The notes under the pieces were generated by a model that saw only the letters and a program-made list of their open reading frames with translations, made no database searches and was not told the DNA's origin. A stretch of 64,000 bases of DNA, taken from Hemiscyllium ocellatum (lineage: Eukaryota). How positions within the stretch are numbered: the stretch's first letter is position 1; each line of letters opens with the position of its first letter. The translations under genes and the position numbers were made by a program. This document shows, piece after piece, positions 7,318 through 7,858 of this stretch. Location of the stretch: positions 19,860,341-19,924,340 of the forward strand of contig NC_083409.1 in assembly GCF_020745735.1 (NCBI RefSeq). Reading direction: 5' to 3'.

Positions 7318-7345
7318 CACAGTGAGAGCTCCCAGTACAAAAACC
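7318..7345 (+). other. J recombination signal sequence with a 12-bp spacer
   Basis: CACAGTG (7318-7324) AGAGCTCCCAGT (12 nt) ACAAAAACC (7337-7345); heptamer and nonamer are both perfect. Confidence 0.95.
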
Positions 7346-7379
7346 TCAGCTCTCTGCTTCTCTCTTATCACTGTCAACA

Positions 7380-7519
7380 TCTCTCTGTCTCTCTCTGTCT
7401 CTCACTTACTCTCACCTTCTCTTTGTCATTCATGTTTTTCTGTTTTTTTCTCATTCTGTTTCTTTCTCTCTCTCTTTCTCCCTCTCTCTCTCTTTCTCCC
7501 TCTCTCTCTCTCTCTCTCT
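7380..7519. repeat. CT-rich microsatellite in the V-J spacer
   Basis: Imperfect (CT)n and (CTCTTT)n tract. Confidence 0.9.
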
Positions 7520-7830
7520 GGGTTAAGTCCAGCTGGGTTCAGGAGGTTTGTGAACTTTATATTTTGATGTTAAATCTTGCAGCTGCTCTTCACATGTGGC
7601 CATGGAGTGTAAGAGGGAAACTTGAGGCCTTCAGTGAGCGGTGGACACCACAGGGACTGGAGTGTGTCGTGGACAGTGACAATCCCAGCATGGGGTAATT
7701 TGTTCAGTTTCATTTATCTTTAACTGTGGACTTGTCAATACAAGAGGTGCGTGTGTATGTTCTCTATTATATATTAAATATATGTAATTGTGGGATGTGT
7801 CAGTAGAGGAGGTGGGACTATGTGTATCAA

Positions 7831-7858
7831 GGTTTTTGTACGGCTCTGTATCACTGTG
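7831..7858 (-). other. V recombination signal sequence with a 12-bp spacer
   Basis: Minus strand reads CACAGTG (7858-7852) ATACAGAGCCGT (12 nt) ACAAAAACC (7839-7831); perfect consensus. Confidence 0.95.

What the first reader, a model, noticed from the sequence alone, without database searches (positions are those of the whole stretch)
7318..7858. Intact Ig kappa V-J pair in which both RSSs have 12-bp spacers (12/12, breaking the 12/23 rule)
Seen: the J RSS is CACAGTG-AGAGCTCCCAGT-ACAAAAACC and the V RSS is CACAGTG-ATACAGAGCCGT-ACAAAAACC. Both are perfect, face each other 541 bp apart, and have 12-nt spacers; there is no alternative nonamer 23 nt from the J heptamer. Leader, V, J, splice sites and promoter are all intact, and a trimmed join would give a normal 9-aa CDR3 (e.g. 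QQSESFPLT). Established: RAG1/2 efficiently joins only 12 with 23, and kappa-type genes are V-12/J-23. Inference, with four options: (a) a one-helical-turn (11-bp) deletion from a 23 spacer silenced the cluster; (b) the V is used with a J-23 of another cluster, although sharks normally rearrange within a cluster; (c) a 23/23-flanked D-like bridge exists or existed, giving a light chain with VDJ logic; (d) the J acquired a 12-RSS by a germline RAG hybrid-joint or RSS swap.
Basis: partly seen in the sequence, partly recalled or inferred. Interest (0 to 1): 0.9.

Follow-up and report, generated by a model that had tools for sequence, protein, structure and literature searches.

The report
Shark kappa J signal shortened by deletion
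One shark antibody light-chain mini-gene has lost exactly 11 bases from the recombination signal beside its J segment, so its V and J now carry the same signal type and probably cannot be joined; this is a single decayed copy, not a new recombination rule.

Summary
On the minus strand there is an intact kappa-type V (leader 8395-8347, V exon 8160-7859) and an intact J (7317-7283). Each is flanked by a perfect heptamer-12-nonamer signal, and the window holds no other signal or J.

The cause is a clean 11-bp deletion. All 12 comparator kappa J signals have a 23-bp spacer, usually AGAGCTCCCAGTGCAGAGGCTGT. They come from seven Chiloscyllium punctatum clusters, two Scyliorhinus torazame signals, and one cluster each from Stegostoma, Hemiscyllium and Heterodontus. 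The window keeps the first 12 of those bases and lacks GCAGAGGCTGT; GT/GT microhomology flanks the gap.

The syntenic C. punctatum ortholog is colinear over about 22 kb and has the normal J 23-signal. The deletion is therefore lineage-specific or allelic, or less likely an assembly error. That ortholog has its own lesion, a V heptamer reading CGCAGTG.

An RSS swap (d) and a D-like bridge (c) are rejected. Use of the V with another cluster's J (b) is untested.

Most likely this is a recombination-crippled cluster with open reading frames. Unchecked notes from this scan list other defective kappa clusters in the same genome. Interest is low to moderate, mainly as a natural 12/12 test substrate.

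The parts
8502..8509 (-). Octamer-like promoter element ATTTACAT. A TATA-like TTTATAAAG lies about 40 bp downstream, at roughly 8464-8456.
   Evidence: Read. Identical in all comparator clusters that cover this position. The promoter is 96.8% identical to the ortholog.
8347..8395 (-). Leader exon (ATG at 8395; 49 nt; donor GT at 8346-8345).
   Evidence: 48 of 49 nt identical to the C. punctatum ortholog.
7859..8160 (-). Kappa-type V exon (302 nt), open reading frame intact. It carries one unusual Gly-to-Val change in the conserved FR3 RFTG motif.
   Evidence: Pfam V-set, E = 2.6e-18. 94% amino-acid identity to C. punctatum 'immunoglobulin kappa light chain-like' P0031. Codon comparison.
7831..7858 (-). 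V recombination signal: CACAGTG, 12-bp spacer ATACAGAGCCGT, ACAAAAACC. This is the canonical kappa V 12-signal.
   Evidence: 0 mismatches. Most comparator kappa V segments scanned also carry 12-bp spacers.
7346..7830 (-). V-J intervening DNA (485 bp). It includes a CT/GA-rich microsatellite at 7438-7519 and has no D-like element.
   Evidence: Relaxed signal scan. Tandem repeats. Colinear with comparator clusters.
7318..7345 (+). J recombination signal, written heptamer first on the + strand: CACAGTG, 12-bp spacer AGAGCTCCCAGT, ACAAAAACC. It is a 23-signal that has lost 11 bp (GCAGAGGCTGT). The deletion junction is at 7336/7337, and the GT at 7335-7336 is the microhomology.
   Evidence: Alignments A1 and A2. 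28 of 28 retained bases are identical to the ortholog.
7283..7317 (-). J-kappa coding segment (35 nt, LTFGKGTKLRL). Splice donor GTAAGT at 7282-7277.
   Evidence: the only J-like motif followed by a donor in the window. Matches the J segments of the comparator clusters.

Best explanation
This is a single-V, single-J kappa (shark type III / nurse-shark NS4 family) light-chain cluster. An 11-bp deletion, flanked by 2 bp of GT microhomology, removed the nonamer-proximal half of the J signal's 23-bp spacer.

Because 11 bp is one helical turn, the result happens to be a perfect 12-type signal. V and J therefore both carry 12-signals.

RAG1/2 assembles a cleavage-competent synaptic complex efficiently only on one 12-signal and one 23-signal. 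V-to-J joining within this cluster is therefore expected to be strongly suppressed. The cluster should contribute little or nothing to the light-chain repertoire, even though its promoter, leader, V, J and splice sites are still open. In IMGT terms it would be an 'ORF' J segment in a recombination-dead cluster.

Shown here: the anatomy, the deletion, its absence from the syntenic ortholog and from 12 comparator J signals, and the absence of any rescue element nearby.

Inferred: the loss of rearrangement, and that the deletion is truly in the germline.
For: Anatomy and deletion:
- Both signals are perfect 7-12-9, and the window holds no other signal or J.
- Twelve of 12 comparator kappa J signals have 23-bp spacers with a near-invariant sequence. 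They are C. punctatum L001-L003 and L005-L008, two in S. torazame L004, Stegostoma L009, Hemiscyllium L010 and Heterodontus L012.
- The alignments show one clean 11-bp gap and otherwise identical signal bases.

Ortholog:
- L008 is the syntenic ortholog: window 22231 down to 3 is colinear with L008 1 to 18320. It has the intact J 23-signal.
- The V exon differs from the ortholog by 8 synonymous and 5 non-synonymous codon changes. That pattern fits past purifying selection followed by a late lesion.
- The ortholog carries an independent lesion, a V heptamer reading CGCAGTG. The same cluster is thus decaying separately in two lineages.

Literature:
- 12/23 rule, and the proposal that a 12-signal cannot fit the 23-signal protomer: PMC4333397.
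- The first three heptamer bases (CAC) are essential for cleavage: PMC10367010.
- Shark rearrangement is reported to occur only within clusters: PMC5192425.
- The nurse-shark NS4 family has pseudogene clusters with non-canonical signals: PMC2193156.
Against: - No read-level data, so an assembly or consensus error, or a variant on one haplotype only, cannot be excluded.
- No expression or repertoire data, so loss of function is inferred from what is known of mammalian RAG.
- Everything else in the cluster is intact, which leaves open a very recent event or some residual use.
- Low-level 12/12 joining is known to occur. I found no quantitative value in the paper library; my recollection is that it is one to two orders of magnitude lower than 12/23.
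- The C exon lies outside the window, so its state in this genome is unknown.
Confidence: 0.8

Rival explanations
1. The 11 bases are missing only from the assembly (a consensus or collapse error), or only from one haplotype. The animal would then also carry a normal 23-signal at this J.
For: No read-level evidence is available. All 12 comparator signals, including the ortholog, have the 23-bp spacer. The flanks are otherwise perfectly conserved.
Against: The deleted segment is not a homopolymer or a tandem repeat. The window has no N runs. From general knowledge, clean 11-bp losses in complex sequence are unusual as consensus errors. GT/GT microhomology is typical of real deletions.
Confidence: 0.08
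2. The deletion is real but the V is still used. Its intact 12-signal would join to a J 23-signal in another kappa cluster, or leaky 12/12 joining would give a low but real output.
For: The V, promoter and V signal are fully intact. V-exon changes against the ortholog are mostly synonymous. Unchecked scan notes place other kappa clusters on the same sequence piece, and one note proposes geometry for joining between clusters.
Against: No other J or signal lies within the 64-kb window. The nearest kappa features in the scan's notes are about 450 kb away (unchecked). Published data indicate that shark V(D)J joining occurs within clusters, not between them (PMC5192425; PMC3014032). The V carries a Gly-to-Val change at a conserved FR3 glycine.
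Confidence: 0.08
3. A D-like element flanked by two 23-signals bridges V and J, giving the light chain V-D-J logic.
For: None found, beyond the formal need for a 23-type partner.
Against: In the relaxed scan of 7316-7860, the best 22-24-spacer candidate is CACAGGG with 4 of 9 nonamer mismatches; every other candidate has at least 2 heptamer mismatches or at least 5 nonamer mismatches. The interval is colinear with ordinary V12/J23 clusters. The 12-signal is explained by a simple deletion.
Confidence: 0.01
4. The J acquired a V-type 12-signal through a germline RAG hybrid joint or signal swap.
For: RAG activity in shark germ cells is documented by germline-joined light-chain genes (PMC2193156).
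Against: The J spacer AGAGCTCCCAGT is the heptamer-proximal 12 nt of the family's J spacer, not the V spacer ATACAGAGCCGT. The DNA beyond the nonamer aligns with the J-upstream flank of all comparators.
Confidence: 0.01

Closest known systems
Cartilaginous-fish kappa (type III; nurse-shark NS4 family) V-J-C light-chain clusters
   Same: - One V and one J about 0.5 kb apart in the same orientation.
- A kappa-like V (DIIMTQSP..., YYCQQ).
- A V 12-signal and a J with FGKGTKL.
- The family promoter and leader.
- A GAGCTC (SacI) site in the J signal, as described for nurse-shark NS4 (PMC2193156).
- Synteny with an annotated C. punctatum kappa gene.
   Different: The J signal has a 12-bp spacer instead of 23, owing to an 11-bp deletion. 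The C exon is not inside the window. In the ortholog it lies 9.6 kb 3' of J, which would put it about 2.2 kb beyond coordinate 1.
Ig/TCR gene segments classed 'ORF' by IMGT, meaning an open reading frame with a defective recombination signal. Examples are nurse-shark NS4 pseudogene S5, with non-canonical heptamers, and the C. punctatum ortholog here, with a CGCAGTG V heptamer.
   Same: Coding sequence and splice sites are intact while the recombination signal is altered, so the segment is predicted not to rearrange normally. The definition of the ORF class comes from my own knowledge of the IMGT rules.
   Different: Heptamer and nonamer here are both perfect. Only the spacer length changed, and by exactly one helical turn, so the defective signal looks like a flawless signal of the wrong class.
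Lambda-type loci (V 23-signal, J 12-signal)
   Same: The J carries a 12-signal, as lambda J segments do (PMC5985310).
   Different: The V is kappa by sequence and has a 12-signal. The J and its spacer are kappa-family by sequence. The 12 spacer is a truncated kappa 23 spacer, not a lambda-derived one.

Membership tests
Shark kappa (type III/NS4) V-J-C cluster | V-set domain with kappa-type framework, and closest relatives annotated as kappa | tested here: met
   Pfam V-set, E = 2.6e-18. Best hits are C. punctatum and other shark 'immunoglobulin kappa light chain-like' proteins, 94% to P0031.
Shark kappa (type III/NS4) V-J-C cluster | V flanked by a heptamer-12-nonamer signal | tested here: met
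   Perfect 7-12-9 at 7858-7831.
Shark kappa (type III/NS4) V-J-C cluster | J flanked by a nonamer-23-heptamer signal | tested here: not met
   The spacer is 12 bp. 12 of 12 comparators have 23 bp. No cryptic nonamer lies at 22-24 bp.
Shark kappa (type III/NS4) V-J-C cluster | Single V and single J in the same orientation, about 0.5 kb apart | tested here: met
   485 bp between the nonamers, both on the minus strand, and the only V and J in the window.
Shark kappa (type III/NS4) V-J-C cluster | Kappa C exon downstream of J | tested here: inconclusive
   No C-domain open reading frame in the 7.3 kb 3' of J within the window. The ortholog's intact C lies 9.6 kb 3' of J, which maps about 2.2 kb beyond the window start.
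Recombination-competent 12/23 signal pair | One partner with a 12-bp spacer and the other with a 23-bp spacer | tested here: not met
   Both spacers are 12 bp. No alternative partner is in the window.
Recombination-competent 12/23 signal pair | Actual V-J joining in lymphocytes (coding joints or signal circles) | not testable with these tools
   No repertoire or read data are available.
IMGT 'ORF' gene segment (open frame, defective signal) | Intact coding region and splice site with an altered recombination signal | tested here: met
   The J open reading frame and donor are intact. The signal's spacer length is altered relative to the family. The F/ORF/P classes are cited from PMC7555362; the exact ORF criteria are from my own knowledge.
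Lambda-type light-chain cluster (V23/J12) | V flanked by a 23-signal | tested here: not met
   The V signal spacer is 12 bp. The sequence 23 nt from the heptamer mismatches the nonamer at 7 of 9 positions.

The most novel reading that the evidence does not exclude
The deletion is a real germline allele and the cluster is still used. Either shark RAG tolerates this perfect 12/12 pair at a measurable rate, or the stranded V 12-signal joins to a J 23-signal in another cluster. The second would be direct evidence for V-J joining between clusters in shark light chains. Either way, this locus would be a natural in vivo reporter for the strictness of the 12/23 rule and of cluster autonomy in cartilaginous fish.
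Probability: 0.08. Interest if true: 0.6.

Novelty: new member of a known kind. Interest (0 to 1): 0.25.

Why it matters
As a mutation it is ordinary. Multi-copy shark Ig clusters decay in many ways, and this is one more.

It is unusual in one respect. The lesion changes only the signal class and leaves two perfect consensus signals and an otherwise intact cluster. Shark clusters have one V and one J and are thought to rearrange only within themselves. This locus is therefore a ready-made natural substrate for two questions:
- How strictly is the 12/23 rule enforced in a cartilaginous fish?
- Can a V be rescued by a J from another cluster?

It is also a caution for automated annotation. Signal quality scores alone would call both segments functional.

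Tried and rejected
- Cryptic partners. I scanned for nonamers 22-24 nt from either heptamer and for any 12- or 23-type signal in the V-J interval. Nothing usable turned up.
- Second J or further signals. I looked across the 64 kb and found none.
- C exon. I searched the window with an open-frame scan and an Ig-domain pattern and found none. The ortholog shows it should lie just outside the window.
- Downstream open frames. Some open frames downstream of J (window 99-584 and 1794-2108, + strand) match reverse transcriptase, so they are LINE debris rather than Ig exons.
- Hybrid-joint origin. Rejected, because the spacer and flank are J-type.
- Look-up before the window start. The search of earlier findings does not allow this.
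- Numbers for 12/12 joining efficiency. I found none in the paper library, and Jones and Gellert 2002 is not held. The size of the expected defect therefore rests on my own knowledge.
- Species of origin. I did not determine it exactly. It is an orectolobiform shark close to Chiloscyllium punctatum but not that species: the ortholog is 95% identical in the V exon and about 80-84% in flanking non-coding DNA.

Full report
**Observation**

The window holds exactly two matches to CACAGTG-N12-ACAAAAACC, both perfect. They lie at 7318-7345 (+) and 7858-7831 (-), against 0.09 expected by chance at up to two mismatches. A broader scan with 11-13 and 22-24 bp spacers and up to three mismatches finds no other credible signal in the 64 kb, and the window has no N runs.

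Reading the minus strand gives a complete light-chain V-J unit:
- Octamer-like ATTTACAT at 8509-8502, followed by a TATA-like element.
- Leader exon 8395-8347.
- Leader intron 8346-8161.
- V exon 8160-7859.
- V signal 7858-7831.
- 485 bp of intervening DNA.
- J signal 7345-7318.
- J coding 7317-7283 (LTFGKGTKLRL), with donor GTAAGT.

The V exon is a V-set domain (Pfam, E = 2.6e-18). No usable nonamer lies 22-24 nt from either heptamer.

**What it is**

The nearest proteins are shark kappa chains. The best is Chiloscyllium punctatum 'immunoglobulin kappa light chain-like' P0031, at 94% over the V exon. Other C. punctatum, Scyliorhinus, Stegostoma, Hemiscyllium, Cetorhinus, Heterodontus and nurse-shark chains fall at 70-90%.

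I fetched the DNA of twelve such loci. Every J signal recovered has a 23-bp spacer:
- Seven C. punctatum clusters (L001-L003, L005-L008).
- Two S. torazame signals (L004).
- One cluster each from Stegostoma (L009), Hemiscyllium (L010) and Heterodontus (L012).

The spacer sequence is almost invariant. It reads AGAGCTCCCAGTGCAGAGGCTGT in the orectolobiform sharks and ACAGCTTCCAGTGCAGGGGCTGT in Heterodontus. No J was recovered from the Cetorhinus locus (L011). Most of the V signals scanned have 12-bp spacers.

The kappa norm of V-12/J-23 therefore holds in these sharks. The literature reports the same for bony-fish kappa loci (PMC5985310).

**Origin of the 12-bp J spacer**

The window's J spacer, AGAGCTCCCAGT, is exactly the heptamer-proximal 12 nt of the family's 23-bp spacer. 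Alignments with six paralogous clusters (A1) and with the ortholog (A2) show a single clean 11-bp gap, GCAGAGGCTGT. Heptamer, remaining spacer, nonamer and both flanks stay in register.

All 28 retained signal bases are identical to the ortholog. The gap can be placed in three equivalent positions because GT precedes and ends it. That is 2 bp of microhomology, as expected for a slippage or end-joining deletion.

This rules out an RSS swap or hybrid joint. Such an event would have brought in the V-type spacer ATACAGAGCCGT and a V-type flank.

It also removes the need for a D-like bridge. None is present, and the V-J interval is colinear with ordinary clusters apart from microsatellite-length differences and one indel of about 60 bp.

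**Orthology and timing**

Locus L008 comes from the C. punctatum chromosome-level assembly. It is colinear with the window from 22231 down to 3, matching L008 1 to 18320 at 79-92% identity, so it is the syntenic ortholog.

Its J signal is a perfect 23-type. The deletion therefore arose after the two lineages split, or it is an allele, or it is an artefact.

The ortholog's C exon is intact 9.6 kb 3' of J. In window terms that is about 2.2 kb before coordinate 1, which explains why I found no C exon in the window. Much of the long J-C intron seen in the window holds reverse-transcriptase fragments.

The V exon is 95.4% identical between the two species, with 8 synonymous and 5 non-synonymous codon differences. 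That pattern suggests purifying selection over most of the divergence, so the inactivation is probably late.

Two further signs point to relaxed constraint:
- The ortholog has its own, different signal lesion, a V heptamer reading CGCAGTG. The CAC triplet is essential for RAG cleavage (PMC10367010).
- The window's V alone has Val in place of the conserved FR3 glycine, RFTV against RFTG in every comparator.

**How it most likely works**

RAG1/2 recombines efficiently only a 12-signal with a 23-signal. Structural work proposes that a 12-signal cannot stretch to occupy the 23-signal protomer (PMC4333397). A 12/12 pair should therefore be a poor substrate.

Shark clusters have one V and one J, and available data say rearrangement occurs within a cluster, not between clusters (PMC5192425; PMC3014032). 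The expected result is a cluster that is transcriptionally and structurally intact but recombination-crippled.

Pseudogene clusters with non-canonical signals are already described in the nurse-shark NS4 (type III/kappa) family of about 50 genes (PMC2193156). Unchecked notes from this scan list other defective kappa clusters in this same genome:
- V signals with 10-bp spacers.
- Clusters with no J.
- A V without a signal, facing a J with a perfect 23-signal.
- An out-of-frame germline-joined gene.

The functional consequence is inferred, not shown.

**Rivals**

An assembly error or a haplotype-specific allele cannot be excluded without reads. However, the deleted segment is complex sequence, not a repeat.

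Rescue of the V by a J 23-signal in another cluster, or leaky 12/12 joining, remains possible and would be the interesting outcome. There is no partner within the 64 kb.

**Verdict**

This is a new instance of a known kind, an Ig gene segment with an open reading frame and a disabled recombination signal. Its one neat feature is that the disabled signal is a perfect signal of the wrong class. Its main value is as a natural 12/12 test locus.

Noticed in passing
L008:10400-10440 (C. punctatum CM104974.1, syntenic ortholog): The orthologous cluster in C. punctatum has a V signal with heptamer CGCAGTG (the essential CAC is broken) and nonamer ACAAAAATC. Its J 23-signal and C exon are intact. The same cluster thus carries independent signal lesions in two species.
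   Followed up: partly
window 7958-7960 (minus strand, V exon codon 67 of the 100-codon frame): The window's V has GTG (Val) where all comparator kappa V genes have GGG or GGC (the conserved FR3 Gly of RFTG/RFSG). This may be a sign of relaxed constraint.
   Followed up: partly
window 9145-9921: A degenerate telomere-like hexamer array, (AACCCT) x about 130 at 77% matches, lies about 750 bp upstream of the V start codon. It appears to be absent or much shorter in the C. punctatum ortholog, because the colinear blocks abut around it.
   Followed up: partly
window 99-584 and 1794-2108 (+ strand): Reverse-transcriptase (RVT_1) fragments from LINE-like elements lie antisense to the Ig gene, inside what the ortholog shows to be a J-C intron of about 9.6 kb.
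   Followed up: partly
L002:3247-3252, L005:2355-2360, L006:937-942: Several C. punctatum kappa V segments end in an in-frame TGA directly abutting the heptamer (CCTTGA|CACAGTG). These V segments can give productive joints only after 3' trimming.
   Followed up: no
window 6908-6933 and 7438-7519: A perfect (TGC) x 8.7 microsatellite lies about 350 bp 3' of the J donor. A CT-rich microsatellite in the V-J interval varies in length between clusters.
   Followed up: no
L001-L012 J signals: The 23-bp J spacer sequence is nearly invariant from Heterodontus to the orectolobiform sharks, although spacers are usually described as poorly conserved. This may reflect concerted evolution or a functional constraint on this spacer.
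   Followed up: no
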